Positions 21,574-63,722 of a stretch of 64,000 nt of DNA are shown here, in pieces. The stretch covers positions 186,001-250,000 of IMG/VR virus record IMGVR_UViG_3300005613_000001; one strand, 5' to 3'. A program made the position numbers and the translations under genes. The notes beneath the pieces were generated by a model. That model did not search any database, was not told where the DNA came from, and saw only the letters and a list, made by a program, of their open reading frames with translations. Numbering within the stretch: the first letter of the stretch is position 1; each line of letters opens with the position of its first letter.

Positions 21574-22893
21574 TTAAATTGTCCGTTCTATTTGTCCAGA
21601 TTTAAAACACTTTCTTTCGTCGCTACAAACAAATTCCGGCTCATTCTCTAAATCACTATATCTCAATTCCCACCAATCATATCCCATCCTTTTAATCTCT
21701 TTCCTTTGCCTCTTCCAATGTGAATATTTTACTTCGCTTATAATACCATCCGTTAATCTATATTTTTTTAATTCGGCTTTTTCACACGGCCAATCAATTC
21801 TAAGCTGCGATTGTATGATATCGTTAATTGACCTTTGCATAAAGATTATCAAAACATCTTTGCCTGCTAATTCTTCAACCCTATGGGCAAGTGCAGGACA
21901 TTGTAAAACTGTATTTTCTTTTAATAGTCTTTTGGCCCTTTTAAAGTTGTGAATCTTAAAGTCCCTTTCATCTACTGCCTTATAGCCCAATCTCTTAGCT
22001 ATGAGATTGGTAGTAAATCTTGTACCAGATCTTTGAGGTCCACTAACTACTATTTTTGAAAATTTCCTAAAAAAAGAAAGATCAAATGTATTATTTGTAA
22101 TTTCATCACATGATGATTGATTGTTTTTTTCTTTATAATGTTTCCTAGCCCAAGCCATAATCTTGTTAGATTTTAAAACACATGACACAAACCATTCATC
22201 ATGTTCTCGCAAGGGCGCAAGCTTTGCACGATCTGATTCTATAATGCTTATGGGCTGGAAGTTCTGCACGCTGAGGGGGACTTTGTATAGATTTGACAAT
22301 GATCCGGCATGTTTTAAATGTGCAGAAAGTATTTTAGGATAATATGCACAAACAAATCTTCTCTTTCTTATAAAATTATGATTAAAAACAAAACCAGCTT
22401 GATTTAAATTGCCAAGATCAGAAATATCAGAACGAATGGCGTAATTATTGCTTGAACCAAAAACATTGTGAAATGCCCCTTCACCCTTATCAAATCTAAA
22501 CATCAAATGTTGCCAAAACACAACTTCCGCATTGCCAATGGCATTAGCATAATCAATCGCCTCTTTCAATGAAGGACCAAACCAATCATCATCATCAATT
22601 GGTATAATCCATTTATACTTCTTCGCCTCATCAATAGAATAACATACAGGAATTCCCGTTTTAGAAAGACATTCTTGAGATAACTCTTTTAATTTTTGTC
22701 TAAATTCTAAAAAATGAGGAAATTTTAATAAATTTGACCTGATTCTTTTATATGAATGCTCACGCCTGTTACGGGTATGAAAAGTTGGATATTGAGGAAG
22801 ATACCTCGGTAGATCTTCATACCACAAGGGATGAAGTTCACGCCAATCAACGGTTTTCCGCACAAGAATAGTGCAATCCATAATTAATCCCAA
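21574..22893 (-). CDS. Fusion of a GT-A-like domain and a sulfotransferase-fold domain
   Basis: WIIPIDDDDWF in the N-half; SGPQRSGT 5'-PSB loop and IFMQRSINDIIQS in the C-half. Confidence 0.6.
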   Translation of the reverse strand: MGLIMDCTILVRKTVDWRELHPLWYEDLPRYLPQYPTFHTRNRREHSYKRIRSNLLKFPHFLEFRQKLKELSQECLSKTGIPVCYSIDEAKKYKWIIPIDDDDWFGPSLKEAIDYANAIGNAEVVFWQHLMFRFDKGEGAFHNVFGSSNNYAIRSDISDLGNLNQAGFVFNHNFIRKRRFVCAYYPKILSAHLKHAGSLSNLYKVPLSVQNFQPISIIESDRAKLAPLREHDEWFVSCVLKSNKIMAWARKHYKEKNNQSSCDEITNNTFDLSFFRKFSKIVVSGPQRSGTRFTTNLIAKRLGYKAVDERDFKIHNFKRAKRLLKENTVLQCPALAHRVEELAGKDVLIIFMQRSINDIIQSQLRIDWPCEKAELKKYRLTDGIISEVKYSHWKRQRKEIKRMGYDWWELRYSDLENEPEFVCSDERKCFKSGQIERTI

Positions 22894-23258
22894 ACTAATT
22901 GATTACTTCGCAACCAGTCAGTCAAAGCAAAACGTTTTTTATCTTTGACAAGATATACCTCAACATCCCATGTGTGGTCACGCTTCTTAATCAAAACAAC
23001 TTCGGGCTTAGAAGATGAATTTATTAATTGTATAACTTTTTTTGTTGCCTTAGATGGGGTCTTGATCTTTAACTGCCCTTTAATTCTTTGCTGATTATCA
23101 AGCACAATATCAAACTCATGCCCTTGAAGAACCTGAATCTTTGATATTTTATAGCGTTGATTTAAAAAATCACTGTACTTGGCATAATCCATAAAAATCA
23201 CAGTACCAAGAGCTATCATCATGAAAAGAAGCAACATCGTTATTCTTTTACTCTGCAT
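22884..23258 (-). CDS. Membrane-anchored protein, possibly a degenerate SNase-like OB fold
   Basis: N-terminal TM helix; weak thermonuclease-like layout without catalytic residues. Confidence 0.4.
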   Translation of the reverse strand: MQSKRITMLLLFMMIALGTVIFMDYAKYSDFLNQRYKISKIQVLQGHEFDIVLDNQQRIKGQLKIKTPSKATKKVIQLINSSSKPEVVLIKKRDHTWDVEVYLVKDKKRFALTDWLRSNQLVWD

Positions 23259-23775
23259 CTTTTACCACCTGCAATGCGTCTAGTCCATCAATGACTTCCT
23301 TCATCCACAAATTGTATTTACGCGCATTCTCTGCAAAAACTACTAAATCTAATGGATGAACCTTCCACTTTGGATCACCATTATCATCATATTTCACCTG
23401 ATCGGAATACTGTACTCTGCCCCAGTCGTCCTTCACAACCTTTGCTTTCCCGTTGATTTCCTGGGTAAGAGGCTCATATTCAACATCACACCTTGTCAAA
23501 TGAAGATCCAAAAGAGCCTCCCTTTGAGCATCATTTAAAATCTGATACCATACATCCACACAAAGCGTTATGCAAAAATCGTACTTAGTGCCTTGCCAAA
23601 TTTTATTAAAATCAGAAAACTTGAGCACTTTTCCTAAATTTAACTTGCCCTGGGTGAAAGGCTTAGAATCAGCCATGCAAACGGCTATGTTGGCAGTCTC
23701 TAATTGGGGGTGATTAACCTTGATCTCATTCAACAAATCAATAACTGGGGGCGGGGCCTTGGTAATAATAGGCAT
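23248..23775 (-). CDS. Phage metallopeptidase-like protein with a degenerate active site
   Basis: DFCITLCVDVW...QREALLDLHLTRC aligns by eye to the ...QREALIDHELxH pattern, but HExxH is lost. Confidence 0.5.
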   Translation of the reverse strand: MPIITKAPPPVIDLLNEIKVNHPQLETANIAVCMADSKPFTQGKLNLGKVLKFSDFNKIWQGTKYDFCITLCVDVWYQILNDAQREALLDLHLTRCDVEYEPLTQEINGKAKVVKDDWGRVQYSDQVKYDDNGDPKWKVHPLDLVVFAENARKYNLWMKEVIDGLDALQVVKDAE

Positions 23776-23794
23776 AGTAATCTCCTTTTCCCCG

Positions 23795-23823
23795 ATTTTA
23801 TATTAAAGTTAATCAGGTGTCAA
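23795..23823 (-). promoter_or_regulatory. Sigma-70-type promoter
   Basis: TTGACA-17 nt-TAAAAT on the minus strand, upstream of AGGAG RBS and ATG 23775. Confidence 0.7.
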
Positions 23824-23829
23824 CAGAGA

Positions 23830-24420
23830 TTAGGTCAAATAAGACTTCAAGAAATCAGGCGAAATTGAATCACTTAATGCATCTATCTGCGCCTTCATAT
23901 TTTCTATTTGAGTTTGAATTTTCTTGCCCTGGTCACTCTTAGCCAAAGCATCCTTGTTGTTCAGCTTGCTTTCTAATTCATGAAGATTCACTTTCATGTC
24001 GTGAAGCTGCTCCAACTGGTTAACATCAGCCAAATTGGGCTTATAATTTTGATCTTTTCCGACAGAAGCGGGTTGAATGGGGTTAGCAGCATTGGCAACA
24101 GTAGAAGCAACATCTCCTATTTCCTTTTTGCCAAGATCAGGCTCTATAGGTTGAGGAGCAGGCGTAATCCGATCATCTTCATTCAAATTCTCCTCGCATG
24201 CCGGGTCCACTCCAACTTGGTACTTGCACCCACTTAACTTATTCCAATATTCAACATCGCCCTCCTGAAGCAATTTGGGGGCGGGGGTATTGCTTTGCCC
24301 AAAGAAATCTTCTTTTTCTACGCCAGCCTCAGGCTTAGTGGTAGGAGACTCAATGGTGCCATCCTTTTGAGCCTTATCCCACATATCCACCCATTTATCG
24401 AATTTATTGTTGTCTGTCAT
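23830..24420 (-). CDS. Hypothetical protein with a C-terminal coiled coil
   Basis: 196-aa ORF; TATATA upstream. Confidence 0.6.
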   Translation of the reverse strand: MTDNNKFDKWVDMWDKAQKDGTIESPTTKPEAGVEKEDFFGQSNTPAPKLLQEGDVEYWNKLSGCKYQVGVDPACEENLNEDDRITPAPQPIEPDLGKKEIGDVASTVANAANPIQPASVGKDQNYKPNLADVNQLEQLHDMKVNLHELESKLNNKDALAKSDQGKKIQTQIENMKAQIDALSDSISPDFLKSYLT

Positions 24421-24469
24421 AATAATTTATATATTAGTCAATTTGTCATTTTATAAACTAAATAGGATT

Positions 24470-25684
24470 ATGTTTAGTTGCATTAACGAATGTGGACAAT
24501 GGGGGCAAAGCTCTGCGATGATCGGCCCGAGCTTTAGCAGTACAAATTTAGCACATCTCCCTGCTATCACGCTCTGCGGACATAACGTTGTAGCATCAGC
24601 AGGACAATTTACTTACAGCGTAAGAAGTTGCGCCGACTCAGCAACCATAACCGTTAATAATACAACTTATAAAGAAGAAAGACAAAGAGGCATTTACCTA
24701 TTTAATCCCCCTTTTGCTACCTTGGCAGACGACGACTCGCCGCCTGTCGATCAAGTCAATGTGACTGATGCATGCCCCCAAGGAGCAATCGACTGGAAAT
24801 GGGATACTTTACCAGATGGGCAATCGGCAGATTGGCAACGTGTGGATGATAGACCATGTGCTGCTGGTGCGGTGGCGGAAAAACCCGATAGAGACCCCCC
24901 AACAAACTTTCAAGGAGACCCGATACATGGAGGCACGGGTCAAACGTGTTGCGAATGCCAAAGTGGAACTGTTACTTATAGATCAGAAGGGGATGCTTTC
25001 GGTAATAATTTTACATGGGGCGATCCCATAGAAAATTGCGAAAATAACGCAATCGCGCCATCAGGAAGCGAACCCGAAACACCACCAACTAGACTTTTTG
25101 AAAGTGTAGAGAAGTGTTGTGTGTGTGAGTGTGGCGAAACAACATTTACCTTCCATGCCCCTACCGTGCCTACTAGTTTTGGCACTTGTAGCTGGGAATG
25201 GTCGGCCCAATTTAGACGCTGGTTGAAAACCTCAGACGACTGCACTAATCATGGAACTTGCGTTGCGCCATCTGGGACAGGTCCGGGCACCAGAACCACA
25301 TATTGTGATTCTCCTTATGGACATTGTATTTATAAATGGGTCACAAACCCATCAGAAGGATGGGTTCTTCTATATAATGGCTGTAAGGATGGCCCCACAG
25401 GGCAGGGCACACCCACTGAGCCGCCTGAGAATAATCCTCAGGGTTTTAGAACGTACAAGACACCATGTACGCCTCCTAATGTTGGTGGAGGATCGTGGCG
25501 ATTTAGAGACAAAGACGGAAACGACGGGCGGGATTGTGATGATGGAGCCGATGTGCCCAGCACCCCCAGTAGAGAAGACGAAGACGAAGACGGAGACATA
25601 CAAGTAATATGCTGCGAGGATTGCCCAAGTGTGAGCTTGTTGTCCCCAACACCAGCAGAATTAACTCCCTTCTGGGACTTCTGA
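24470..25684 (+). CDS. Cys/Trp/Pro-rich repeat protein, possibly a virion fibre or decoration protein
   Basis: Start moved to ATG 24470 (AGGA RBS; TAAATA at 24459-24464); several ~50-aa Cys/Trp-containing units. Confidence 0.55.
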   Translation: MFSCINECGQWGQSSAMIGPSFSSTNLAHLPAITLCGHNVVASAGQFTYSVRSCADSATITVNNTTYKEERQRGIYLFNPPFATLADDDSPPVDQVNVTDACPQGAIDWKWDTLPDGQSADWQRVDDRPCAAGAVAEKPDRDPPTNFQGDPIHGGTGQTCCECQSGTVTYRSEGDAFGNNFTWGDPIENCENNAIAPSGSEPETPPTRLFESVEKCCVCECGETTFTFHAPTVPTSFGTCSWEWSAQFRRWLKTSDDCTNHGTCVAPSGTGPGTRTTYCDSPYGHCIYKWVTNPSEGWVLLYNGCKDGPTGQGTPTEPPENNPQGFRTYKTPCTPPNVGGGSWRFRDKDGNDGRDCDDGADVPSTPSREDEDEDGDIQVICCEDCPSVSLLSPTPAELTPFWDF

Positions 25685-26152: not shown

Positions 26153-28991
26153 TATTTTCTCCCCATTCCATAACGAACACACGGCTATCTCTCTCTTTGG
26201 GAGGTAGCATATGTCGCTTATGTCTTTGTGGGCTATCTAGTGTATATCCAAATTTAGTAGGCGGTTGAACCCTAATACGTAAAAGGTTAGCGCCTGTGAA
26301 TTCTTCTTCAAATCGTTCCCAATCATTGGCCCAGACAGTTACATATTGTCTTTCTCCATTACCATCTTCAACCCATATATTATAATTAAACCCCTTACCA
26401 TTTTTCCAATCTCTTTTTTTATGAGATACAACAACCACTTCTACAGGGCCAACAGTAGCACCATCCCGCATTTCTAACCGTAATTGAGAAAATGTGCAAC
26501 CTGTATAATCTGGGCTTTTCTCTAAAGGGTGGTTCCAAATGAATCCCAGATACTTAGTCTCCGCCGATTCAGGGGAAGTATAGATTTCTTCTAATTCTTT
26601 TGGAATATAAGTATCATCACTTGTAGGATCAAATTTATCAAATGTGAATGGATTTTCGTCTGCTTCCGCCTCTTTTTTAAGATATCCTTTGATGGATCTT
26701 TCTCGTTTGCCCCATAAAGTCTTTAATCTTTTCCATTTATTCAGATTCTTCTTTTGAACTTTCCCATATTTAGGACCAGGAGTGCGACATACTTCCTCAA
26801 CAATGTCATCTTCATCAAACAATTGTTGCCACAATTCTAAATTAGACTCATCAAACGTTGCCAATTCATCATGGTCAGCAAGTATTTCTTTCAACTCACT
26901 ATCATACCTATCCAAAGTTTTCTGGTATCTCTTCCCACGATCTATCCTATTTTTCTCCGCAGCCTTAAAGTTTTCGTAATATTTATACAATGTAACGGGA
27001 TCGCCCTCATCAAAAAGATTAAGACCCAAAAGCGGCTTGATAACTGTGGCATCTGTACCAAAGAATCTTAAGAACTGTTCAAGAGATGCATAGGGCTGTC
27101 CTTGAACAATTTTCTCAGCATTTGACTCACCCACCCCTTTGATATTTGAAAGTCCAAAATAAATCTTATCATCAGGCGAAGGCTCTTCATTCTCTTGGAT
27201 GATTGCAAATCTCACATTTGATTTACTAATATTGACTGGCTCTACGGGGATATCATGAATTACCGCCTCAGTTTTATACTCTCTAATTTTGTCCTCTTTT
27301 GTTTCACAGCTTAGAATACCAGCGTAGAATTCAAGTGGGTAATGGGCTTTTAGCCAAAGAAGTCTTGAGCTTACATAAGTGTAGGCTACCGCGTGGCTTT
27401 TGTTAAATCCATAAGCCGCGAATGCTTCAATTTGATCCCATAGGAATCTAGTATTTGCTGCTGCGGCTGTTTGGTGGATATTTTCTTTTGTGAGTTTGGA
27501 CGGATATTGAAGTTTATACAAATAAGCAACGTATCCCAGAGATTTAGCGTAAGCATTCTCCATACCTTCATAAAATGCATAATTCGCCACTTCTCGTTCT
27601 AATTCTTCAAATGAATCTTTATGGAGTCCAATCAGAGGCGTAACAACTTCTTTTGCATCTTTCGGGATTTCGGGCTCACAATCACGTACTAATATTTTAG
27701 CCCCATTTTCAAGAAACATCTCTTTATACTTACCAAAAATCTCAACCTTCTTCTTACTAATAGCCTTTCTCACTTTTTCAGTGTGACTATCAGGAACCCC
27801 ACCAATATATTGGAGAACCTTCATAACCTGTTCTTGATAAGCCATTACCCCGTAGGTATTCCCTAGAATACTTTCCATAGCTGGGTGTATCGTATATGGT
27901 TCTTCTCCCTTCTTTCTTTTTACATACTTCTCCGCCATGCCCATTCCCAACGGACCAGGGCGATATAAGGCTGTGTACGCTACCAAATCATCGAAACTTG
28001 TAACGCCTCCTTGTTTTACCAATGATCTTATTCCAGGGGAATCAAATTGGAACACGCATTTTAAATCCCCCTTGTTTGCCATTGCAATCGCTTTGGCATC
28101 ATCTAGATAAGCCGTATCTGACCAATCCCGTTGTCCAGGTAATGCGCAGATTGAATCCAAACCATGACGAGCTTTCACTAATTGACAAATTCTACCAATT
28201 TGTTCCAAGTTCGTAATTACAAGAAGATCAAATTTTACCAGACCCAATGGCCCAAGCTCCTGTGCATTCAATCCCTCAACAAAGGCAGAGGTAATTTGTT
28301 CAGCCCTATCAACCACAAGGGGAACAAAATTACCAAGAGGTTTATTAGAAATAATCAAACCCGCAGCATGCTTGCCCATGCTCTTATTGCGATTTGTGAG
28401 CTTTCTAGCCGCATTGTAAATATCAGGATTCGCTTCACAAAACTCTGCAAGGGCAGGATTTAATCGCAGTGCGTCTTCCCAAGTAACCGCATCACCCTCT
28501 TCATCTTTATCTACTAAATATTTGGTAATTGCCACCATTTCATCCCGACTCTTACCATAAACCTTAGCAATATCAATAAGAGAGCTACGCATACCAAACG
28601 TATTATAACTGCCGATATTGCAAACCCGTTCTGGACCGAAGGCATTAGGTGCCCATTCCTCCTTCAAATAATCTCGTATTGTCTTGTGGAAGTCTACATC
28701 TACATCAGGCATATCCCCATCAAATTCAAAAACAGGCTTCTCATTAATATCAAAATCAGGAACCAAATTTAAAAGATAAGCTACCAAGAGATTGTTTTGA
28801 TTAACAGGATAACGGATTTTCTTTTCTTGAAACTCATCGTATAAATCAACAAAATATTGAGCTTCATTCTTGGTTTTTATAGCCTTAATCTCCTCAGACA
28901 ATCGCCCCTTGTGTAGATCATCCTCTAAACCCCGCCTCTTTAAAGCGCTAGCACACAAATAAATCAGTCTATCTTGGTAGTTCATAAGCAT
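26130..28991 (-). CDS. dnaE: DNA polymerase III alpha (DnaE), C-terminal catalytic polypeptide of a split enzyme
   Basis: MPDVDVDF catalytic motif, GKHAAGLII, KFDLL, VFQFDS, ALYRPGP, YQEQVM, YGFNKSHA, GLSNIKGVG, C-terminal OB fold; no PHP domain; start probably 28991 or 28985. Confidence 0.92.
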   Translation of the reverse strand: MLMNYQDRLIYLCASALKRRGLEDDLHKGRLSEEIKAIKTKNEAQYFVDLYDEFQEKKIRYPVNQNNLLVAYLLNLVPDFDINEKPVFEFDGDMPDVDVDFHKTIRDYLKEEWAPNAFGPERVCNIGSYNTFGMRSSLIDIAKVYGKSRDEMVAITKYLVDKDEEGDAVTWEDALRLNPALAEFCEANPDIYNAARKLTNRNKSMGKHAAGLIISNKPLGNFVPLVVDRAEQITSAFVEGLNAQELGPLGLVKFDLLVITNLEQIGRICQLVKARHGLDSICALPGQRDWSDTAYLDDAKAIAMANKGDLKCVFQFDSPGIRSLVKQGGVTSFDDLVAYTALYRPGPLGMGMAEKYVKRKKGEEPYTIHPAMESILGNTYGVMAYQEQVMKVLQYIGGVPDSHTEKVRKAISKKKVEIFGKYKEMFLENGAKILVRDCEPEIPKDAKEVVTPLIGLHKDSFEELEREVANYAFYEGMENAYAKSLGYVAYLYKLQYPSKLTKENIHQTAAAANTRFLWDQIEAFAAYGFNKSHAVAYTYVSSRLLWLKAHYPLEFYAGILSCETKEDKIREYKTEAVIHDIPVEPVNISKSNVRFAIIQENEEPSPDDKIYFGLSNIKGVGESNAEKIVQGQPYASLEQFLRFFGTDATVIKPLLGLNLFDEGDPVTLYKYYENFKAAEKNRIDRGKRYQKTLDRYDSELKEILADHDELATFDESNLELWQQLFDEDDIVEEVCRTPGPKYGKVQKKNLNKWKRLKTLWGKRERSIKGYLKKEAEADENPFTFDKFDPTSDDTYIPKELEEIYTSPESAETKYLGFIWNHPLEKSPDYTGCTFSQLRLEMRDGATVGPVEVVVVSHKKRDWKNGKGFNYNIWVEDGNGERQYVTVWANDWERFEEEFTGANLLRIRVQPPTKFGYTLDSPQRHKRHMLPPKERDSRVFVMEWGENNDRRTDN

Positions 28992-29031
28992 AAATATAAT
29001 TGATTCTCTATAAATCGTCAAGGGAGACAAT

Positions 29032-29793: not shown

Positions 29794-29807
29794 CCCTAAA
29801 TTAAGTT

Positions 29808-30461
29808 ATGATTGTAGCTACGTATTTAACAGATTCTCACAAACAACTCTACGAGGAGTTTTTTGAACCGTCTGCTACTAAAAATGGGTGGGAAATCTAC
29901 AAAGTGGAAGGGCCGCAGGTTGGGTGCGGGCACTTTGGCGAGCCAGATTGGCCGGAAATGATGAGGCGGAAAGCTCGGGCAATGTATGATGCTATATGTA
30001 CTTACCCAAATGAAATCATACTATATGCCGATTGCGACATATATTTTGCCCGAGACTTCAACTGTAAGAAGCTTCTGGGAGATAACCTCTTGGCAGCCCA
30101 GGTAAGCGACAGAAGAGAAATGTGTGCAGGCTTAATGATAATTAATTGCACGCAAGAAATTAAAAGGATGTATAGAAAAATATATCGCTCTAAGAGATTC
30201 TATCAGCCAGGGAATCTAATGAGCGATCAAGATGCATTAAATCACTTTGTAAAAAAAGATAAAATCCCTCGCAAACTCATACCTAGACATCTATTTTGGT
30301 GTCCAGCTATTGTGAAGCGATGGGAGAGATGGCAAGAAGTGGATTCAATTGAACAAATTCAACCTATACCTAAAACTATACTAGCTGCCCATGCTAATTG
30401 GTGTAGGGGTCTTGAATTAAAAAAGGAAATTTTAAACTACGTGAAACAATGCATAAATTAA
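29808..30461 (+). CDS. Nucleotide-diphospho-sugar transferase (GT77-like)
   Basis: LYADCDIYF DxD, CAGLM, SDQDALN, AHANW. Confidence 0.7.
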   Translation: MIVATYLTDSHKQLYEEFFEPSATKNGWEIYKVEGPQVGCGHFGEPDWPEMMRRKARAMYDAICTYPNEIILYADCDIYFARDFNCKKLLGDNLLAAQVSDRREMCAGLMIINCTQEIKRMYRKIYRSKRFYQPGNLMSDQDALNHFVKKDKIPRKLIPRHLFWCPAIVKRWERWQEVDSIEQIQPIPKTILAAHANWCRGLELKKEILNYVKQCIN

Positions 30462-31042
30462 AACACACTCACATGAGAACTAAAAGGAATTCGCCAGGAC
30501 TCCATAAGCTCTGTAATTCGATCCCAGAAAAACACAGAAATCTTCTTGTAGAAATTGGAAGTTTCTACGGAGAATCCACAGCAATCTTTGCAGGGCACTT
30601 TAAACAAGTAATCGCAATTGATCCTTGGGATTTCAAAGGCTGCAACGAATTAAATAAGGGTTCAAAGAATAGCAGCGAGAAGCTAATCACAGGAAAAATG
30701 GCTGAGGAGCGATTTGACGAAAATGTAGGCAAAATAGAAAATATTAAAAAAATCAAAGCATACGACCATGATGTAGTTGACTCTTTTGAAGACAACTCCA
30801 TCGATTGCATCTATATTGACAGCATACACACTTTTGAAGCGTGTGGGCTCACGATATTAAGATGGTGGCCCAAAGTTAAAAACTATGGATACATAGCGGG
30901 ACACGATTTTACGCCAATGTGGCCGGGTATCCAAAAAGTGGTAAAAATAATAGCACAAATGACAAAACAAAGAATGCGCCGATTTAAAGGGGATTGTAGT
31001 TGGCTACTACAAAAAAGAGTTTTCACCCCGCATCAAGTATAA
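30449..31042 (+). CDS. Class I SAM-dependent methyltransferase (Methyltransf_24-like)
   Basis: VEIGSFYGES, AIDPW, IYIDSIH, IAGHDF. Confidence 0.8.
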   Translation: MHKLKHTHMRTKRNSPGLHKLCNSIPEKHRNLLVEIGSFYGESTAIFAGHFKQVIAIDPWDFKGCNELNKGSKNSSEKLITGKMAEERFDENVGKIENIKKIKAYDHDVVDSFEDNSIDCIYIDSIHTFEACGLTILRWWPKVKNYGYIAGHDFTPMWPGIQKVVKIIAQMTKQRMRRFKGDCSWLLQKRVFTPHQV

Positions 31043-35984: not shown

Positions 35985-36041
35985 GACAAACCTAAACTAA
36001 TAAGAATAAATATTTTTAAAGGATTTTATGCAAGGAGTGCC

Positions 36042-36725
36042 GTGATAGTAAGTAGGACACATAAATTTATCTTTCTTAAAAGCGTTAAAACAGCAGGGAC
36101 TAGTATTCAAGTGGCTTTGTCTCCCTTTTTAGTCCCAGGAGTAGATTGTGGATGTGGGGCTAGATGGTGTTCAACAAAATGCCCCTTTGTGGGAGGGAAC
36201 TGCTATCAACTTCTCAATCCAAAGAAGACCCCGCCGACACGCGAACAACTGCCGGGACACTATCGCAGAACACAATTCTTTTCTCCCCACGAAAGTTTAA
36301 AAAGCCTAGTAGCGACTCTACCTCAAGATGAAATTAAACAATACTTTAAATTTGTGTTTGTAAGAAACCCTTTTGATAGATTAGTCTCTCGTTATTGGCA
36401 TCTTGGAGGGCCTAAAAAATATGATAGCTTTAACCAATTTGTTTTAAAATACCCATGTCTGCCTGGGAATTTCATATATCGTACATGGTGTAGATACAAT
36501 GAAATAAAAGTTGATTTCATTGGGAGATATGAAAACTTAAAGACAGATTTTAATTATATTTGTGATACTATCGGCTTGCCGAGAACTGAACTTCCCAGAT
36601 GTAGAGGCCAGCACCGGAAGGATAAAAAACATTACACAGAATATTATACAAAAGAATTGCGGGAATTAGTAGAAAGTTACTGTGCTGAGGATTTAAAACA
36701 ATTTAATTATAAATTTGGGGACTAA
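36042..36725 (+). CDS. Sulfotransferase family 2 protein
   Basis: FIFLKSVKTAGTSI, FVFVRNPFDRLVSRY, DFIGRYENL; AGGAG RBS, TAAATA at 36007-36012. Confidence 0.85.
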   Translation: MIVSRTHKFIFLKSVKTAGTSIQVALSPFLVPGVDCGCGARWCSTKCPFVGGNCYQLLNPKKTPPTREQLPGHYRRTQFFSPHESLKSLVATLPQDEIKQYFKFVFVRNPFDRLVSRYWHLGGPKKYDSFNQFVLKYPCLPGNFIYRTWCRYNEIKVDFIGRYENLKTDFNYICDTIGLPRTELPRCRGQHRKDKKHYTEYYTKELRELVESYCAEDLKQFNYKFGD

Positions 36726-49612: not shown

Positions 49613-49626
49613 TTCCTTGTCCTTTT

Positions 49627-49690: not shown

Positions 49691-49699
49691 AAACCCTAT

Positions 49700-55505: not shown

Positions 55506-55511
55506 TATATA
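55506..55511. promoter_or_regulatory. Palindromic TATATA box between divergent genes, putative bidirectional late promoter
   Basis: The 18-nt gap between two ATGs contains essentially only this motif. Confidence 0.5.
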
Positions 55512-55516
55512 CTAAA

Positions 55517-56197
55517 ATGGAATTAAATTTAAATAAATCTGACTTCCAAGTTATTGGAATGCGAAGGAGCGGTCACCACGCTATTATTCATTGGCTAATT
55601 CCCAACCTGGGTTGTGAGGTTTATTTCTCTAATAACTGTCATATAACAAAAAATAAACAAATCACAACAAACCACAAAGCCAACATAAACATCCCAGAAA
55701 ACGCTCATAGGCTTGTAAATTTTGAGGACAAACTATTAACTCTAATTGAAACAATCATTCGAGGAAAACGCATACTTGTTTTAAGAGACCCTTTCAACTG
55801 TATAGCAAGTAGAATCTGTAAGCGTCTTGATAACAAACGACCATTAACTCCACGTTGCTTAAAATTTGACATGAATCTTTGGTATCAATACGCAATGGAA
55901 TTCACGGGGAAAACAAATTATCTTGGGGGATGTGTTAAAATTAATTACAACAAGTGGTTTGTAGATAAAGAATATAGAAACCAAATTGCAGATAAATTCG
56001 GAGGCTTGAAAAAAGACCTAAAAAGTAAAGTATGTACTTTTAGTAGCTTTGATGGGAAAAAATATCAAGACAGAGCAGAAGAAATGCAAGTTTTACATAG
56101 ATGGAAACAAATAAAACACCCACTCTTTCAAAAGGTTCTAGCCAATAAAAAATTACGCGAACTATCCAACTCAATATTTGGAGATGTGTTGAAATAA
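55517..56197 (+). CDS. Sulfotransferase-fold protein
   Basis: GMRRSGHHAI, LVLRDPFNCIASR, INYNKW. Confidence 0.65.
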   Translation: MELNLNKSDFQVIGMRRSGHHAIIHWLIPNLGCEVYFSNNCHITKNKQITTNHKANINIPENAHRLVNFEDKLLTLIETIIRGKRILVLRDPFNCIASRICKRLDNKRPLTPRCLKFDMNLWYQYAMEFTGKTNYLGGCVKINYNKWFVDKEYRNQIADKFGGLKKDLKSKVCTFSSFDGKKYQDRAEEMQVLHRWKQIKHPLFQKVLANKKLRELSNSIFGDVLK

Positions 56198-56465: not shown

Positions 56466-56471
56466 CCCAAA

Positions 56472-59703: not shown

Positions 59704-59869
59704 TCTCCAATAGTTCCTTTTCACGGAACACATGGAGCCATTCATCGTATTGTTTCTGAAACTCCTCAACTGTGGGAACTTCATCAAGTTCAAACATCAT
59801 AGGATGGACAGTGCCATCTGCTGTTTCAAACTCAGTTTTGGTTACTTTGACGATTTTTCGGCTCAACAT
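59675..59869 (-). CDS. Small acidic ORF upstream of tnpA inside the IS
   Basis: GAGAGG RBS; TACATA box at 59889-59894; overlaps the tnpA start. Confidence 0.55.
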   Translation of the reverse strand: MLSRKIVKVTKTEFETADGTVHPMMFELDEVPTVEEFQKQYDEWLHVFREKELLENEPETIEHR

Positions 59870-59956
59870 AATGTGTTTCCTCTCTTTATATGTAGTATCA
59901 TACCTACAATTTTCATTTAGAAAAAGTCAGATTTTGTGAGATTTTCTGGCAACTGT

Positions 59957-60610: not shown

Positions 60611-60761
60611 AAATCATCTCCAGATCAGAAACCCTATATCTTCTGTGCCCTCCGATTGTGCGAAGTGGGGCGAGTTTGCCATTCTTATCCCAATTTCTCA
60701 AAGTGGTCGTAGTGACTCCTAACATTGAAGCCGCTTTTTTTATAGACACAATTTCTTCCAT
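60564..60761 (-). CDS. Stand-alone MerR-type HTH similar to the IS607 TnpA N-domain
   Basis: SIKKAASMLGVTTTTLRNWDKNGKL...GGHRRY; start ATG 60761. Confidence 0.75.
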   Translation of the reverse strand: MEEIVSIKKAASMLGVTTTTLRNWDKNGKLAPLRTIGGHRRYRVSDLEMIYEKDTGNIRDKKQSK

Positions 60762-60780
60762 AATATTATATAGTAACACT

Positions 60781-62163
60781 TTATAGGTTTTTATAAGATT
60801 TTACAACTTTTTCAATAATTTGGGTTGTAGAAACACCTTCCACTAATGGGGCATAATAGAACTCCTTAGCCAATTCAGCAGAGCGGGGTCGTTTTATACC
60901 TTCACCCTTTACGAGCACATCAGGCTGAATTTCCTTATACAAGTTATAAGGACTTTCAGTTTTAAAAGGAAGTACAAAATCTACACACTCTAAGGAAGCA
61001 ATTAAATTTAATCTCTGTTCTAAAGGTACAACAGGTCGATTTTCGCCCTTTAGCTTTTTAACACTTTCATCAGAATTTATTAAAACAGCCAACTTATCCC
61101 CTTTTGATTTAGCAAATTGAAAAGAAGCAACATGCCCATAATGCATAAGATCAAATACGCCATTCGAACACACTAATTTAAAATCTCTATTCATCAGATC
61201 GTGGGGGTCCACAAATTTTGTTTCAACAAGCTCATAAGGATATATGGGCTTATTGTATTCCATCTGGACATAAACAGCACCAGCCCTATAGGCAATTTCA
61301 ACAGCTTCAACTAAAGAGAAATTATGAGCTATTGCTAGAGCTAAATGGGACACAAATGAGTCTCCCGCCCCAATTACACTGGTTACTTCTGTGGAGAGAT
61401 TGGGGCGGTATGAAAATGTCTTTCCATCTATTGACATCCCCATCACACCACACCCGCCATAAGTTGTTACAATATTACTTCCACCTAACTTTTCAGCCAA
61501 TCTCTGACATTGGAAATCAGGGTCTTTTACATCTGTAAATCGTTCTGCTTCGACAGAATTAGGCTTAAAAACCGAACACCCTATCCATTTCTCAATAGGT
61601 TCATCTTTGGGATCAACTATAGTTTTAACGCCATGCGTATGACAAATTGTAATGATCTCTTGTGTAAACTTAAAATCATTAAAAAGCCCCTTGCCATAAT
61701 CACTTAAAATTGCTAATTCAAACGCATTTTTCCTAATCCCCTCTTCAAAAACCTCAAGCAACCGCCTGCGGTCATCATGATCTATCACAAATTGACTTGT
61801 TTCAATATCCCATCTAATTAAATTTTGACCATCTTGAAATCGTTTTTTGATTGGAATTCTATTAGATGTGATAACAGGATCAATATTTAGATGATGTAAA
61901 ACATTTAAATCCTTCTGGGAGAGCAACCCAAATAATGTGTATTCCACATTCCAGTTCTTAAACTGGTGTGCTACATTTGCCGCACCACCAGGAACTACTT
62001 GAATGGGTTCGTCATCATTTGACCGCATAACGGGGATTGGGGCCTCGGGTGAAATCCTTTTTACATCCACCTTGTAATACTCATCAATCATTAGGTCGCC
62101 CAAAATGGCTATACGAGGCGATCTTAAACGGTTATCTGTAAGGTATTGTGCTATTATGCTCAT
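60781..62163 (-). CDS. hldE: Bifunctional heptose-7-phosphate kinase / heptose-1-phosphate adenylyltransferase
   Basis: GDLMIDEY, RISPEAPIPV, PGGAANVA, SDYGKG, GAGDSF; NGVFDLMHYGH, NSDESVKKLKG.NRP, STTQII. Confidence 0.92.
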   Translation of the reverse strand: MSIIAQYLTDNRLRSPRIAILGDLMIDEYYKVDVKRISPEAPIPVMRSNDDEPIQVVPGGAANVAHQFKNWNVEYTLFGLLSQKDLNVLHHLNIDPVITSNRIPIKKRFQDGQNLIRWDIETSQFVIDHDDRRRLLEVFEEGIRKNAFELAILSDYGKGLFNDFKFTQEIITICHTHGVKTIVDPKDEPIEKWIGCSVFKPNSVEAERFTDVKDPDFQCQRLAEKLGGSNIVTTYGGCGVMGMSIDGKTFSYRPNLSTEVTSVIGAGDSFVSHLALAIAHNFSLVEAVEIAYRAGAVYVQMEYNKPIYPYELVETKFVDPHDLMNRDFKLVCSNGVFDLMHYGHVASFQFAKSKGDKLAVLINSDESVKKLKGENRPVVPLEQRLNLIASLECVDFVLPFKTESPYNLYKEIQPDVLVKGEGIKRPRSAELAKEFYYAPLVEGVSTTQIIEKVVKSYKNL

Positions 62164-62196
62164 AACATAATGAGAGTAAAATCATACAATATTAAA

Positions 62197-62204
62197 TATA
62201 AATA
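62197..62204 (+). promoter_or_regulatory. Canonical T4-type late promoter TATAAATA
   Basis: Exact match upstream of ATG 62240. Confidence 0.6.
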
Positions 62205-62239
62205 AGGCAAAGGACATTCCGTAAATACAAGGTGGTATT

Positions 62240-62935
62240 ATGATACACAATCAGAGAATTTATCAAATAATAATTCGAGGAGAAAGAAACACAGGAACAC
62301 ACTGGTTGCATTCCCTATGCCGAGAGAATATTAAGAACGTGAAAATAGGCAATAAGGCATACTTATGGAAGCACGGATTTTTTCTAGGAAAAGAACCTAA
62401 AAAAACAACACATTTAATTTTAGTGATTACAAAAGATGTATATGCATGGGTTTATTCATTGTATAAGCGCCCATATCATGTGAAAAGAACTTCAAATTTA
62501 AATCACTTCATAAGAAGGCCATACCAATCATTCTGCACTACTAAATGGTTCGTCAAACACATGAAGCAAACTATGTATAAGGAGTTAACCTTTGAGAAAA
62601 AACCAAATGGTAAATTATACGAAAACATCATACAACTAAGAAATGCAAAACATCGCCAATGGCTATCATTAAGAGGAGAGAGAAAAGTTGAATTTATAAA
62701 ATACGAAGACCTATTTGCAACTCCTGAGAAAGTTATTGATACAATATGTCAAAAATACAAGTTACAGACCAAAAGATTCACAAACAAAATGGGTTGGCGA
62801 AGTCAGTGGTCATCTCCTAAAACATATAAAGAAAATGATCCCAAAGCTCGCTTTAATAAAAAACAAATCCAATTTATAGCCGCTGAAAATGATTGGGAAA
62901 CAGAGGCTCTCATAGATCAAATCGCCATTAAATAA
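62240..62935 (+). CDS. Sulfotransferase-fold protein
   Basis: GERNTGTHWL, WKHG, ITKDVYAWVYSLY, IKYEDL. Confidence 0.65.
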   Translation: MIHNQRIYQIIIRGERNTGTHWLHSLCRENIKNVKIGNKAYLWKHGFFLGKEPKKTTHLILVITKDVYAWVYSLYKRPYHVKRTSNLNHFIRRPYQSFCTTKWFVKHMKQTMYKELTFEKKPNGKLYENIIQLRNAKHRQWLSLRGERKVEFIKYEDLFATPEKVIDTICQKYKLQTKRFTNKMGWRSQWSSPKTYKENDPKARFNKKQIQFIAAENDWETEALIDQIAIK

Positions 62936-62936
62936 C

Positions 62937-63722
62937 CTACATAGTTATCTTGGGTAAATCTTCCATTCCTAACGCATATCGGAAAGCGCTAGATATCATA
63001 AAATTACTATTAAGCCAATCATTTGGAGTGAATTGGAAACAATGTCTTGGAGCATCTTTCTTAAAATGCGATCCAAAACAAATAGCCCAGATAACAGGCG
63101 CGGGGAATTTCTTTCTGATGAACTTAGACCAATGTTTATTAGAAAGAAATGCAGCAGCAGCCTCACTTATGGGACATGGACGCTGATAGTGTAACCCATA
63201 AACATCACCAGATACCCTGCTTTTATTTAACATTACGGCCCCAATAGCGTGCCAACTAGGAACCTTAAATTTAGTTTTTTTTAATAGCTTATATTGCTTA
63301 CGTAAGTATCTTTTTAATGTTGGACTATTAGGCTTTGCAATCATTAAATTTACAGATAGCCACTTTGTTGTCCCTGGCGAAAGCTCATCAGCCATAAATG
63401 TGGCCTTAGATTTCTCAAGACGATCAGTTAAAAGAGATAAATTATTCAAACAAATTACATCTACATCTACAAAAACCCCGCCATATTTAGTCAGAATTCT
63501 TGGCTTAACATAATCTGTCTTGTGTGCCCATTTCCTAATTTTCTCCCAATTTTCCGTCAAATCCGGCAAATACTCTCTGATGTTTTTGCTGTTTAATAAA
63601 TGAAAATCAAAGTCTTGAGAATTATGAAGCAGTGTTTTGAGTCCCAACTCACAAAGCGGGGGCATAGGGGGTCCATCCCAAAAACACCAAAGATTTTTTA
63701 GTTTGGGTTCAACTTCTTGCAT
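62937..63722 (-). CDS. Capsular-polysaccharide-synthesis / GT32-like glycosyltransferase
   Basis: LWCFWDG, HKTDYVK..IL.KYGGVFVDVD DxD; TATATA at 63727-63732. Confidence 0.8.
   Translation of the reverse strand: MQEVEPKLKNLWCFWDGPPMPPLCELGLKTLLHNSQDFDFHLLNSKNIREYLPDLTENWEKIRKWAHKTDYVKPRILTKYGGVFVDVDVICLNNLSLLTDRLEKSKATFMADELSPGTTKWLSVNLMIAKPNSPTLKRYLRKQYKLLKKTKFKVPSWHAIGAVMLNKSRVSGDVYGLHYQRPCPISEAAAAFLSNKHWSKFIRKKFPAPVIWAICFGSHFKKDAPRHCFQFTPNDWLNSNFMISSAFRYALGMEDLPKITM

What the first reader, a model, noticed from the sequence alone, without database searches (positions are those of the whole stretch)
21574..63722. Four sulfotransferase-fold genes and several GTs, many under late boxes: possible sulfated virion glycocalyx
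Seen: sulfotransferase folds at 21574, 36042, 55517 and 62240; GT2, GT32-like and GT77-like enzymes; two methyltransferases; a nucleotide-sugar dehydrogenase. Genes 36042, 55517, 62240 and 63722 carry late boxes. Established: giant eukaryotic viruses glycosylate their own capsids. Inference: late expression fits decorating the virion with sulfated/methylated uronic-acid glycans better than host capsule conversion. This is poorly characterised for bacteriophages as far as I know.
Basis: partly seen in the sequence, partly recalled or inferred. Interest (0 to 1): 0.62.

Follow-up and report, generated by a model that had tools for sequence, protein, structure and literature searches.

The report
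Phage-encoded sulfation and glycosylation toolkit
A 527-kb T4-like giant phage encodes its own PAPS-making kinase, about seventeen sulfotransferases (four in this window) and many sugar-handling enzymes, most likely to coat its own particle, above all a collagen-like tail fibre, with sulfated sugars, which no study has shown for any bacterial virus.

Summary
All four sulfotransferase (ST) calls hold, with unequal support. 36042 is a Pfam hit. 62240 is confirmed by a confident fold. 55517 and the C-terminal half of 21574 are probable; 21574 is a glycosyltransferase-ST fusion. The GT32-like gene, the GT77-like gene and one methyltransferase are confirmed. The GT2 and the sugar dehydrogenase exist but lie upstream of the stated range. 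No second methyltransferase was found.

The "late box" is a real motif (TATATA or NATAAATA), 9-13 times enriched upstream of genes. It heads every virion-gene unit I identified, including the T4 gp23-like capsid operon. 62240, 63722 and 55517 carry it; 36042 has only a weak version.

The window is part of a genome-wide system. It comprises an APS kinase (no ATP sulfurylase, no CysH), 13 Pfam-level and 4 structure- or motif-level STs, an NrnA-like PAP phosphatase next to the fusion gene, an HldE-like enzyme, 4 GT9-like and about 6 GT2 genes. All are soluble, and no export machinery is encoded.

Outside the window, a GT2-TPR-methyltransferase gene directly precedes a tail fibre with 127 Gly-X-Thr triplets, and an ST follows 3.3 kb downstream.

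Virion decoration is the best reading (about 0.45). It is unproven, and host-envelope remodelling remains a live rival.

The parts
4195..4941 (-). GT2-family glycosyltransferase (outside the stated range)
   Evidence: Pfam Glycos_transf_2, E 2.6e-20
8771..9733 (-). UDP-glucose/GDP-mannose dehydrogenase-like gene. It is 320 aa with the N-terminal and central domains only (outside the stated range)
   Evidence: Pfam UDPG_MGDP_dh_N, E 1e-22, and UDPG_MGDP_dh, E 3e-22
20467..21546 (-). DHH-family phosphoesterase, NrnA-like. It is a candidate 3'-phosphoadenosine-5'-phosphate (PAP) phosphatase and lies directly downstream of the GT-ST fusion gene
   Evidence: Pfam DHH, E 2.4e-11. The best solved relative is the NrnA bifunctional oligoribonuclease/PAP phosphatase 8iu7, E 8e-6, over residues 21-300
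21574..22893 (-). Fusion protein: N-terminal GT-A-like glycosyltransferase plus C-terminal sulfotransferase-like domain
   Evidence: Atlas features and structure. hhalign probability 79% to the ST4 family over the PSB and PB motifs. Motifs read directly. No Pfam hit
28989..28996 (+). CATAAATA box, 43 nt before the caspase/GT77-like/methyltransferase operon
29808..30461 (+). GT77-like nucleotide-diphospho-sugar transferase
   Evidence: Pfam Nucleotid_trans, E 1.1e-6
30449..31042 (+). Class I SAM-dependent methyltransferase (Methyltransf_24)
   Evidence: Pfam, E 4.2e-13
36005..36012 (+). AATAAATA, a weak box variant 37 nt before ST2
   Evidence: This 8-mer is only 3.7 times enriched upstream of genes
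36042..36725 (+). Sulfotransferase, family 2 (the carbohydrate-ST type)
   Evidence: Pfam Sulfotransfer_2, E 9.1e-16. 721 homologues were found, all carrying PF03567
42114..43244 (+). Nucleotidyltransferase (cytidylyl/adenylyl type) fused to a GHMP-type sugar kinase C-terminal region. It is a candidate maker of an activated sugar
   Evidence: Pfam CTP_transf_like, E 1.4e-14, plus GHMP_kinases_C. NCBIfam rfaE domain II and fucokinase hits. PDB relatives
55506..55511 (+). TATATA box, 11 nt before ST3, with no Shine-Dalgarno sequence
55517..56197 (+). Probable sulfotransferase of a divergent, mostly viral family. A paralogue is fused to TPR repeats and a GT9-like domain at genome 276778-279042
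   Evidence: Atlas model and neighbours. Paralogue E 9e-31. Motifs. Alignment A2
60781..62163 (-). HldE-like bifunctional heptose-7-phosphate kinase / heptose-1-phosphate adenylyltransferase
   Evidence: Pfam PfkB plus CTP_transf_like. NCBIfam HldE, E 5.9e-72, full length but below the equivalog cut-off
62197..62204 (+). TATAAATA box, 43 nt before ST4
62240..62935 (+). Sulfotransferase (fold-confirmed)
   Evidence: AF2 pLDDT 90.5. Foldseek returns only STs. VIA Z up to 12.2. 752 relatives
62937..63722 (-). GT32-like glycosyltransferase with a DXD sugar-binding region
   Evidence: Pfam Caps_synth, E 2e-8, and Gly_transf_sug, E 3.1e-8
63727..63734 (-). TATATATA box, 12 nt before the GT32-like start codon (leaderless-type spacing)

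Best explanation
The window holds part of a genome-wide, phage-encoded sulfation and glycosylation system in a 527-kb T4-like myovirus.

SHOWN
- The genome encodes an APS kinase but no ATP sulfurylase and no PAPS/APS reductase.
- It has 13 sulfotransferase genes over the Pfam cut-offs and 4 more supported by fold or motifs. Four of the 17 are in the window.
- An NrnA-like DHH phosphoesterase lies immediately downstream of the GT-ST fusion gene.
- Sugar-activating enzymes are present: an HldE-like gene, a nucleotidyltransferase-kinase fusion, a UDP-sugar dehydrogenase-like gene and an epimerase.
- Many glycosyltransferases are present: about 6 GT2, 4 GT9-like, a GT32-like and a GT77-like gene.
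- None of these enzymes has a membrane segment. The genome has no flippase-, polymerase- or priming-transferase-like polytopic protein.

INFERRED
- The host supplies APS and the phage kinase converts it to PAPS.
- The sulfotransferases move sulfate onto sugars that the phage glycosyltransferases have attached to an acceptor in the cytoplasm.
- The NrnA-like enzyme removes the inhibitory product PAP.
- Several of the genes are read from T4-type late promoters (TATATA / NATAAATA).
- The acceptors are virion proteins. The first candidate is the 1357-aa collagen-like tail fibre, which has 127 Gly-X-Thr triplets. Its gene is directly preceded by a GT2-TPR-methyltransferase gene and followed, 3.3 kb downstream on the same strand, by a sulfotransferase gene.
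- The variable ST set would then tune the charge and antigenic surface of the particle.
For: TOOLKIT
- APS kinase, E 1.5e-39. No PF01747 and no PF01507 in a record that CheckV rates 100% complete.
- ST census.
- Fold proof for 62240.
- NrnA-like gene. HldE-like gene. GT9-like x4. GT2 x6-7.

CYTOPLASMIC, WITH NO EXPORT ROUTE
- The hydrophobicity scan finds no protein with more than 6 membrane segments apart from the tape measure. Every ST and GT checked has none.

LATE BOX
- CATATATA is 13 times, TATATAAA 8.8 times and CATAAATA 6.9 times enriched within 60 nt upstream of ORFs.
- The box is present at the head of 7 of 7 virion-gene units, against 71 of 393 unit heads overall. The seven units are the capsid operon, the portal operon, the adaptor, the sheath-stabilizer/sheath unit, the tail fibre, the tape measure and a 952-aa gene.
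- Virion genes were identified.
- The capsid protein is T4 gp23-like, E 2e-32. T4-like phages use TATAAATA late promoters with gp55 (PMC1524935).
- In the window the box precedes 62240, 63722, 55517 and the caspase/GT77-like/methyltransferase operon.

LINK TO THE VIRION
- The tail fibre matches PHROG tail-fibre families at E 1e-115. It has 15 Gly-X-Y runs covering 591 residues, with 127 Thr in the third position.
- The upstream gene is a GT2 + TPR + methyltransferase fusion, and a downstream gene is Sulfotransfer_3, E 5.7e-17.
- Gly-Pro-Thr repeats of BclA-type proteins are O-glycosylated on Thr by a neighbouring glycosyltransferase (PMC7157674).
- A GT9/ST/GT cassette lies directly beside the sheath-stabilizer and sheath genes.
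- GT9-like genes are present in 6 of 6 kin records.
- An ST3 paralogue is fused to TPR repeats, a protein-binding module, and a GT9-like domain.
Against: - There are no expression, proteome or chemical data. No sequencing run could be listed.
- Only 4 of 18 ST genes carry the box, or 4 of 11 that head a unit, against a background of 18%. This is not significant.
- Structural genes were partly found by picking box-bearing or large genes. The 7-of-7 figure therefore carries selection bias.
- No gp55-like late sigma was identified. The window's sigma protein resembles SigA.
- A strong terminator-like hairpin separates the fibre genes from the downstream ST.
- The four window STs sit among replication and stress genes, not virion genes.
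- The closest homologue of 36042 (37% identity) lies in a bacterial GT4/GT9/Wzy_C/ABC polysaccharide cluster.
- HldE and GT9 are classically LPS-core enzymes.
- The phage encodes a PEP-CTERM protein, which points to the host cell surface.
- Sulfotransferase activity and acceptors are untested. 55517 and the 21574 C-terminal domain rest on remote evidence.
Confidence: 0.45

Rival explanations
1. Host-envelope remodelling. The phage enzymes build or sulfate heptose-containing LPS-core, O-antigen or exopolysaccharide intermediates of the infected Gram-negative host on the cytoplasmic face. The host's own flippases and exporters carry them out. This would block superinfection, change the matrix around the cell or ease release.
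For: - The closest homologue of 36042 lies in a bacterial cluster of seven GT4 genes, a GT9, Wzy_C, a deacetylase and an ABC transporter.
- HldE-like and GT9-like enzymes are classic LPS inner-core tools.
- The GT32-like gene hits Caps_synth.
- A PEP-CTERM protein is encoded in the window.
- ST cassettes differ between kin phages, as host-range or exclusion genes do.
Against: - No membrane-bound GT, flippase, polymerase or Gtr-type protein is encoded.
- Boxes shared with virion genes suggest late expression, when envelope conversion brings little benefit to a lytic phage.
- GT, methyltransferase and ST genes flank the fibre and sheath genes.
- TPR fusions point to protein acceptors.
Confidence: 0.22
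2. Other acceptors. The sulfotransferases act on proteins directly (tyrosine sulfation, RaxST/TPST-like) or on small molecules or lipids. They would serve signalling, counter-defence or detoxification rather than glycan decoration.
For: - The 62240 model aligns to tyrosylprotein sulfotransferases with the lowest rmsd of the list (Z 10.9, 3.1 A over 174 residues). It also aligns to small-molecule SULTs, Z 11.9-12.2.
- The three single-domain window STs (36042, 55517, 62240) are lone plus-strand genes among minus-strand neighbours, each needing its own promoter, like independently acquired morons.
- The NrnA-like enzyme could equally be a nanoRNase or cyclic-dinucleotide phosphodiesterase used against host defence.
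Against: - 36042 belongs to the carbohydrate-type Sulfotransfer_2 family.
- One ST is fused to a GT and another to a GT9-like domain.
- The same genome carries more than a dozen GTs and sugar-activating enzymes.
- Other viral contigs show the same ST plus GT25/GT2/GT77/epimerase islands.
Confidence: 0.12
3. No concerted system. The APS kinase is an assimilatory sulfur auxiliary gene that boosts host cysteine synthesis. The sulfotransferase-like genes are an unrelated, partly decaying collection of acquired genes.
For: - The literature reads viral cysC as an assimilatory-sulfate gene and notes that cysC phages have larger genomes (PMC10914622).
- One ST_4 gene has an in-frame stop, and one ST_2 ORF is only 99 aa.
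- The 595-kb relative has STs but no APS kinase.
Against: - There is no CysH, CysD, CysN or ATP sulfurylase. PAPS would therefore have no phage-encoded assimilatory sink, while at least 13 PAPS users are encoded.
- Three STs lie within 6 kb of the kinase.
- The ST motifs are intact in all four window genes.
Confidence: 0.08
4. DNA hypermodification. The glycosyl- and sulfotransferases decorate modified bases of the phage DNA, as T4 glucosylates hydroxymethylcytosine, to evade restriction.
For: - The phage is T4-like.
- In Ralstonia phage phiRSL1 the ST2-like ORF overlaps a RefSeq annotation naming a beta-glucosyl-HMC alpha-glucosyltransferase.
Against: - To my knowledge no sulfated DNA base is known.
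- The GT families here (GT2, GT9, GT32-like, GT77-like) are not the T4 DNA glucosyltransferase families.
- TPR fusions and the fibre neighbourhood point to proteins.
- I did not test for base-hydroxymethylase genes.
Confidence: 0.05

Closest known systems
Virion glycosylation in mycobacteriophages (Che8/Corndog type; cited in PMC12363180 and others; details from my own knowledge)
   Same: Phage-encoded glycosyltransferases lie near structural genes and are thought or shown to glycosylate capsid and tail proteins in the cytoplasm before lysis.
   Different: That system has no sulfotransferases, no PAPS supply, few enzymes and actinobacterial hosts. Here there are about 17 STs, an APS kinase and heptose-type enzymes in a T4-like huge phage.
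Self-encoded glycosylation machinery of giant eukaryotic viruses
   Same: A large virus carries its own sugar-nucleotide synthesis and many GTs to coat particle fibrils. Collagen-like proteins are among the glycosylated targets.
   Different: Those are eukaryotic viruses of an unrelated lineage, and a sulfation arm of this size is not a described feature of them. No homology was tested here.
BclA/BclA3 collagen-like spore glycoproteins with an adjacent glycosyltransferase (SgtA) (PMC7157674)
   Same: They have long Gly-Pro-Thr triplet arrays whose Thr residues are O-glycosylated by a GT encoded next to the structural gene. The phage fibre has 127 Gly-X-Thr triplets and a GT2 fusion gene directly upstream.
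   Different: That is a spore surface of Firmicutes, not a phage tail fibre. No sulfate is involved. The similarity lies in repeat type and gene arrangement only.
Viral cysC/cysH auxiliary metabolic genes (PMC10914622)
   Same: This is the same enzyme family (APS kinase) in a large phage genome.
   Different: The published reading is assimilatory sulfate reduction. Here CysH and the sulfate-activation genes are absent and at least 13 PAPS-using STs are present, so PAPS more likely feeds sulfotransferases.
Bacterial carbohydrate sulfation systems (NodH/NodPQ Nod-factor sulfation, mycobacterial Stf0/Stf9, sulfated exopolysaccharide clusters; own knowledge; Stf9, Stf1 and Stf0 appear as fold matches)
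   Same: PAPS-dependent STs act on sugars together with dedicated PAPS synthesis. The ST fold and motifs are shared.
   Different: Those are cellular systems with export machinery and one to a few STs. Here the system is viral, has no export genes and the ST family is greatly expanded.
Annotated but uncharacterised phage sulfotransferases (Ralstonia jumbo phage phiRSL1, Stenotrophomonas phage DLP6)
   Same: They are Sulfotransfer_2-like ORFs in large phages, 25-35% identical to 36042.
   Different: They are single genes. Only 4 of 50,697 GenBank phage records match at all, and no function is known.
T4-type late promoters (TATAAATA, gp55/gp33/gp45; PMC1524935)
   Same: The element is an AT-rich 8-mer without a -35 element, found upstream of virion genes in a phage with T4-like capsid, sheath and portal.
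   Different: The consensus here leans to CATATATA/TATATA. About 30 genes have the box 10-14 nt before ATG with no Shine-Dalgarno sequence, a leaderless-type arrangement. No gp55 homologue was identified.

Membership tests
PAPS-dependent sulfotransferase superfamily | Family profile match above the curated cut-off | tested here: inconclusive
   Met for 36042 (59.2 bits against a cut-off of 22). Just missed for 62240 (21.5 against 22). No hit for 55517 or 21574. Genome-wide, 13 loci pass.
PAPS-dependent sulfotransferase superfamily | Sulfotransferase fold: a P-loop-like alpha/beta core with PAPS-binding elements, distinct from nucleotide kinases | tested here: met
   62240: Foldseek returns only STs, and VIA Z is 8.1-12.2 for 23 ST chains against 7.9 or less for kinases. 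55517 and the 21574 C-terminal domain rest only on Atlas models, TM 0.6-0.76 to ST clusters. My own model of 21574 failed, pLDDT 35.
PAPS-dependent sulfotransferase superfamily | 5'-phosphosulfate-binding loop and 3'-phosphate-binding R...S motif | tested here: met
   Read directly in all four genes. In the 62240 family R16, G19, K44 and H45 are invariant, and S18, T20, W70 and S73 are at least 90% conserved. hhalign aligns both motifs of the 21574 C-terminal domain.
PAPS-dependent sulfotransferase superfamily | Sulfate transfer from PAPS to an acceptor | not testable with these tools
   This needs an enzyme assay.
Assimilatory sulfate-reduction auxiliary gene set (cysC with cysH/cysDN) | APS kinase present | tested here: met
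   PF01583, E 1.5e-39, at genome 151972-152388.
Assimilatory sulfate-reduction auxiliary gene set (cysC with cysH/cysDN) | PAPS/APS reductase (CysH) or sulfate adenylyltransferase present to complete the assimilatory route | tested here: not met
   There is no PF01507 and no PF01747 match in the record, which CheckV rates 100% complete.
T4-type late promoter | TATAAATA-like box enriched upstream of genes and heading virion-gene units | tested here: met
   Enrichment is 9-13 fold. The box heads 7 of 7 identified virion units against 18% of all unit heads. Some selection bias applies.
T4-type late promoter | gp55-type late sigma with gp33 co-activator and sliding-clamp dependence | not tested
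   The only sigma seen, at 33932-35005, resembles SigA regions 2-3.
T4-type late promoter | Transcripts start a few bases downstream of the box, late in infection | not testable with these tools
   No sequencing run could be listed.
Phage virion glycosylation system | Glycosyltransferase genes adjacent to virion structural genes | tested here: met
   A GT2-TPR-methyltransferase gene lies directly upstream of the tail fibre. A GT9/ST/GT cassette lies beside the sheath stabilizer and sheath. GT9-like, GT2 and epimerase genes inside the structural module are conserved in kin phage G004. The window's own genes are not next to virion genes.
Phage virion glycosylation system | Glycan, here also sulfate, covalently bound to virion proteins | not testable with these tools
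   This needs purified particles.
Phage seroconversion / O-antigen modification (Gtr-type or Wzy-dependent) | Membrane-embedded transferase, flippase or polymerase encoded by the phage | tested here: not met
   The hydrophobicity scan finds no polytopic protein beyond a 232-aa protein with 6 segments, and none of the ST or GT genes has a segment. The method is crude, and host proteins could substitute.
NrnA-type PAP phosphatase | DHH catalytic domain with NrnA-like full-length similarity | tested here: inconclusive
   DHH domain, E 2.4e-11. The best solved relative is NrnA, E 8e-6, over residues 21-300. Cyclic-dinucleotide and pGpG phosphodiesterases score close behind. The substrate is unknown.

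The most novel reading that the evidence does not exclude
A bacterial virus makes its own PAPS from host APS and uses an expanded family of about 17 sulfotransferases with its own glycosyltransferases and methyltransferases. With them it clothes its particle, chiefly a BclA-like Gly-X-Thr tail fibre, in sulfated, methylated heptose-containing glycans. This would be the first sulfated glycoconjugate coat of a phage. It would also mean that viral cysC genes, now counted as sulfur-assimilation auxiliary genes, in large phages mostly feed sulfotransferases.
Probability: 0.35. Interest if true: 0.8.

Novelty: new variant of a known kind. Interest (0 to 1): 0.64.

Why it matters
- **A new surface chemistry for phages.** Virus-made surface glycans are known from giant eukaryotic viruses and a few mycobacteriophages. 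Sulfation by a bacterial virus has not been described: the library holds no paper on a phage-encoded sulfotransferase. A polyanionic, variable glycan coat on a phage could affect adsorption, passage through charged exopolysaccharide matrices, particle stability and recognition by grazers or immune systems.
- **A different reading of viral cysC.** Metagenomic surveys count viral cysC as sulfur assimilation (PMC10914622). Here the gene sits with at least 13 PAPS users and no reductase, which suggests another role that can be tested across viral catalogues.
- **A source of enzymes.** The ST families here are mostly viral and uncharacterised. The 62240 family has 752 relatives, of which only 12 of 56 sampled reach any Pfam ST model. 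They are a pool of new carbohydrate-sulfating enzymes.

Tried and rejected
**Steps that failed or gave nothing**
- A single-sequence AF2 model of 21574 was useless (pLDDT 35) and was not used.
- The word-index homologue search found no relative of 62240. The exhaustive search then found 752.
- Sequence profiles of 55517 and its paralogue found no solved structure. hhalign of 55517 to the 62240 family aligned only the P-loop, probability 6%.
- EM motif discovery drifted to an AT-rich/Shine-Dalgarno mixture and was dropped in favour of k-mer enrichment.
- IMG/VR scans with the GT-ST fusion and with the GT2-TPR-methyltransferase protein found no relatives.
- No sequencing run could be listed for 58000-64000.

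**Host inference: unresolved**
- The TnpB at 57869-59062 hits mostly cyanobacteria (Rivularia and Tolypothrix, 42-44% identity).
- The phage IF3 is slightly closer to Pseudomonadota (45-48%) than to cyanobacteria (40-45%).
- The PrkA search gave no taxon names.
- 55517 has no homologue in eight candidate genomes.
- I therefore rejected naming a cyanobacterial host.

**Ideas rejected**
- The whole phage clade does not share the system. Kin fragments at 60-64% portal identity show no ST_1, ST_2, ST_3 or APS kinase.
- The fibre and the downstream ST are not surely one operon. A terminator-like hairpin lies between them.

- No alternative genetic code was needed.

Full report
**What the sequence is.**
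The window is bases 186001-250000 of a single 527,112-bp virus record that CheckV rates complete. GC content is 41%, about 92% is coding, and the standard code applies. The virus is a tailed phage of the T4 type.
- Its capsid protein (genome 423703-425178) matches T4 gp23 at E 2e-32. It is 74.5% identical to that of an uncultured 595-kb phage, LR756511.
- Tail sheath, sheath stabilizer, portal, head-tail adaptor, a 2654-aa tape measure and a tail fibre were identified with PHROGs.
- The host is unresolved. A PEP-CTERM protein in the window points to a Gram-negative with an exosortase. The TnpB hint to cyanobacteria is not backed by IF3.

**Checking the observation.**
36042-36725 is a clear Sulfotransfer_2 protein (E 9e-16). 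Both PAPS-binding motifs are intact.

62240-62935 just misses the Sulfotransfer_1 cut-off, and the word index finds no relatives.
- The exhaustive search found 752 relatives.
- A model built on 56 of them is confident, pLDDT 90.5.
- Foldseek returns only PAP- or PAPS-bound sulfotransferases.
- A Foldseek-independent search puts 23 sulfotransferase chains (Z 8.1-12.2) above all P-loop kinases.
- A profile of the family hits only sulfotransferases in the PDB, weakly.

55517-56197 has no family or PDB sequence hit.
- Its Atlas model (pTM 0.84) has ST_3/ST_1 clusters as structural neighbours, TM 0.60-0.76.
- It carries both motifs.
- It has a paralogue that forms the N-terminus of a 754-aa protein with TPR repeats and a GT9-like C-terminal domain.

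21574-22893 is a fusion. The N-terminal part is GT-A-like with a DDDD motif, and the C-terminal part is ST-like. The nearest Atlas cluster with the same architecture has 285 members, 97% viral. hhalign links the C-terminal domain to the 62240 family over both motifs, probability 79%.

The GT32-like gene, the GT77-like gene and one methyltransferase are confirmed. The GT2 and the sugar dehydrogenase exist at 4195-4941 and 8771-9733, upstream of the stated range. I found no second methyltransferase.

**The boxes.**
Upstream regions are strongly enriched for CATATATA (13 times), TATATAAA (8.8 times) and CATAAATA (6.9 times).
- TATATA shows a sharp peak starting 10-14 nt before the start codon, about 30 genes, typically with no Shine-Dalgarno sequence. 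This suggests leaderless transcripts.
- Taking TATATA or [CT]ATAAATA within 70 nt, 90 of 742 ORFs and 71 of 393 unit heads carry a box.
- All seven virion-gene units do: capsid operon, portal operon, adaptor, sheath unit, tail fibre, tape measure and a 952-aa gene.
- Some of these genes were picked for annotation because they had a box or were large. The 7-of-7 figure is therefore supportive rather than a clean test.
- With a T4-like virion module, the resemblance to the T4 late promoter TATAAATA (PMC1524935) makes 'late' a fair reading.
- In the window, boxes precede 62240, the 63722 gene, 55517 and the caspase/GT77-like/methyltransferase operon. 36042 has only AATAAATA.
- Across the genome only 4 of 18 ST genes have a box. 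Many of the others sit inside longer gene runs.

**Beyond the window: a genome-wide system.**
- The genome encodes an APS kinase (E 1.5e-39) but no ATP sulfurylase and no PAPS/APS reductase family member.
- Three STs lie within 6 kb of the kinase.
- Thirteen loci pass Pfam ST cut-offs and four more are supported by fold or motifs. That is about one ST per 31 kb.
- The same families ring in 0-5 of 14 control bacteria.
- There are four GT9-like genes, six to seven GT2 genes, further GTs and an epimerase, the HldE-like gene and a nucleotidyltransferase-kinase fusion.
- No GmhA-type isomerase was found.
- The DHH protein directly downstream of the GT-ST fusion has the PAP phosphatase/oligoribonuclease NrnA as its best solved relative. 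It would fit removal of PAP, the inhibitory product of sulfotransfer. Its substrate is unknown.
- None of the ST or GT proteins checked has a membrane segment. The genome has no polytopic protein of the flippase, polymerase or priming-transferase kind.

**Link to the particle.**
The 1357-aa tail fibre (genome 449380-453453) contains 15 runs of Gly-X-Y triplets, 591 residues in all, with Thr in the third position 127 times. It is the only collagen-like protein in the genome.
- The gene directly upstream on the same strand is a GT2 + TPR + SAM-methyltransferase fusion. A CATATATA box lies 30 nt before the fibre start.
- Downstream on the same strand come two unknown genes, a terminator-like hairpin, two small genes and a Sulfotransfer_3 gene.
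- Three more STs lie within 8 kb.
- Gly-Pro-Thr arrays of BclA-type spore proteins are O-glycosylated on Thr by a GT encoded next door (PMC7157674). The arrangement here is analogous.
- A GT9/ST/GT cassette (358408-362017) sits directly beside the sheath-stabilizer and sheath genes.
- This cassette is missing at the same place in a syntenic kin phage. That phage instead carries a dehydrogenase-like plus ST2-like cassette elsewhere in its structural region.
- GT9-like genes occur in 6 of 6 kin records.
- ST genes occur in the closer relatives only: LR756511 has at least 5 and G004 has 2-3. The APS kinase occurs only here.
- Glycosylation genes therefore look like a conserved trait of the clade, and sulfation like a variable, expanding add-on.

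**How it most likely works.**
The enzyme families, their number, their solubility, the absence of assimilatory partners and export genes, and the neighbourhoods are shown. The following steps are inferred.
1. Host APS is converted to PAPS by the phage kinase.
2. Phage GTs build glycans on protein acceptors in the cytoplasm, with heptose from the HldE-like route among the sugars.
3. STs and methyltransferases modify those glycans.
4. PAP is cleared by the NrnA-like enzyme.
5. Part of the set is transcribed late together with the virion genes.
6. The fibre is the prime acceptor.

I put this at 0.45.

**Rivals.**
- *Host-envelope remodelling (0.22).* It is favoured by the bacterial polysaccharide context of the closest 36042 homologue, the LPS-core flavour of HldE and GT9, and the PEP-CTERM protein.
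- *Direct protein or small-molecule sulfation (0.12).* It is favoured by the TPST and SULT fold matches.
- *No concerted system (0.08).*
- *DNA modification (0.05).*

**Comparison and novelty.**
- Similar ST plus GT islands occur on other large viral contigs. One 190-kb contig has five Sulfotransfer_2 genes, one Sulfotransfer_4, three GT25, an epimerase, a GT77-like and a GT2 gene within 16 kb.
- The Atlas holds several all-viral ST clusters.
- Only 4 of 50,697 GenBank phage records match 36042.
- The paper library holds nothing on phage-encoded sulfotransferases.
- Viral cysC is read in the literature as sulfur assimilation (PMC10914622). Here that reading fails a defining test, because no reductase is present.
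- I file the finding as a new variant of a known kind: virus-encoded surface glycosylation, extended by a large sulfation arm.

**Limits.**
Everything is computational.
- Two of the four window STs rest on remote evidence.
- Timing rests on a motif.
- The target is inferred from neighbourhood and analogy.

No alternative genetic code was used. No reads were laid. 

Noticed in passing
window 44154-45539(-) and 26130-29030(-): The DnaE-type polymerase III alpha is encoded in two separate genes about 15 kb apart on the same strand. One holds the PHP domain plus the start of the alpha domain. The other holds the rest with the finger and HHH domains. About 20 genes lie between them, including ST 36042. 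No room for a classical split intein was obvious, but this was not examined.
   Followed up: no
window 46749-51787(-): A complete PrkA / DUF444 (YeaH) / SpoVR stress-kinase operon is carried by the phage. PrkA is 92% identical to proteins on two short metagenomic contigs and 65-75% identical to many others, several of them on contigs over 500 kb.
   Followed up: partly
window 57869-60610(-): An IS607-type unit (MerR-HTH serine resolvase 59056-59793 plus TnpB/OrfB 57869-59062) lies next to a GIY-YIG/NUMOD3 homing endonuclease (59957-60610). The best TnpB relatives in species genomes are cyanobacterial, 42-44% identity.
   Followed up: partly
window 31421-32233(-): A phage-encoded protein has a PEP-CTERM sorting signal (TIGR02595, E 1.7e-5). 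This implies a host with an exosortase and points to the cell surface.
   Followed up: no
window 28989-31042(+): An orthocaspase (Peptidase_C14, E 6e-26) heads an operon with the GT77-like transferase and the methyltransferase, under a CATAAATA box.
   Followed up: partly
whole genome, e.g. window 2551-2558(-), 55506-55511(+), 63727-63734(-): About 30 genes have the TATATA box starting 10-14 nt before the start codon and lack a Shine-Dalgarno sequence. This suggests leaderless late mRNAs. The phage also encodes its own IF3 (10964-11479), a factor that governs start-site choice.
   Followed up: partly
window 2593-3246, 6549-7505, 10964-11479, 33932-35005, 45965-46690: Host-like housekeeping genes are present: PhoH, a full DnaJ, IF3, a SigA-like sigma factor (regions 2-3) and ClpP.
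   Followed up: no
window 31023-31424, 32302-33171, 35349-35984, 36722-37507; genome 148737-149642: A cyclic-phosphate-processing receiver domain, a ThiF/E1-like enzyme, an RNA ligase and a radical SAM protein lie in the window. An RlaP RNA-repair nucleotidyltransferase lies elsewhere in the genome. Together they could be an RNA-repair or conflict module.
   Followed up: no
genome 324458-324973(+): A Sulfotransfer_4 gene has an in-frame TAA between its two matched halves. It is either decaying or split.
   Followed up: no
genome 358408-362017 versus kin record G004 (L144-L149): Kin phage G004 is syntenic over genome 331-439 kb but lacks the GT9/ST/GT cassette beside the sheath genes. It carries an HldE-like fragment, a dehydrogenase-like gene and an ST2-like gene at other places in the same syntenic region. 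Glyco/sulfo cassettes therefore move as units.
   Followed up: yes
window 24407-25684(+): A 425-aa TTG-start ORF lies in an unusually GC-rich stretch (45.5% against about 40%). It has no Pfam or NCBIfam hit, and small ORFs overlap it on the other strand. It may not be a gene.
   Followed up: no
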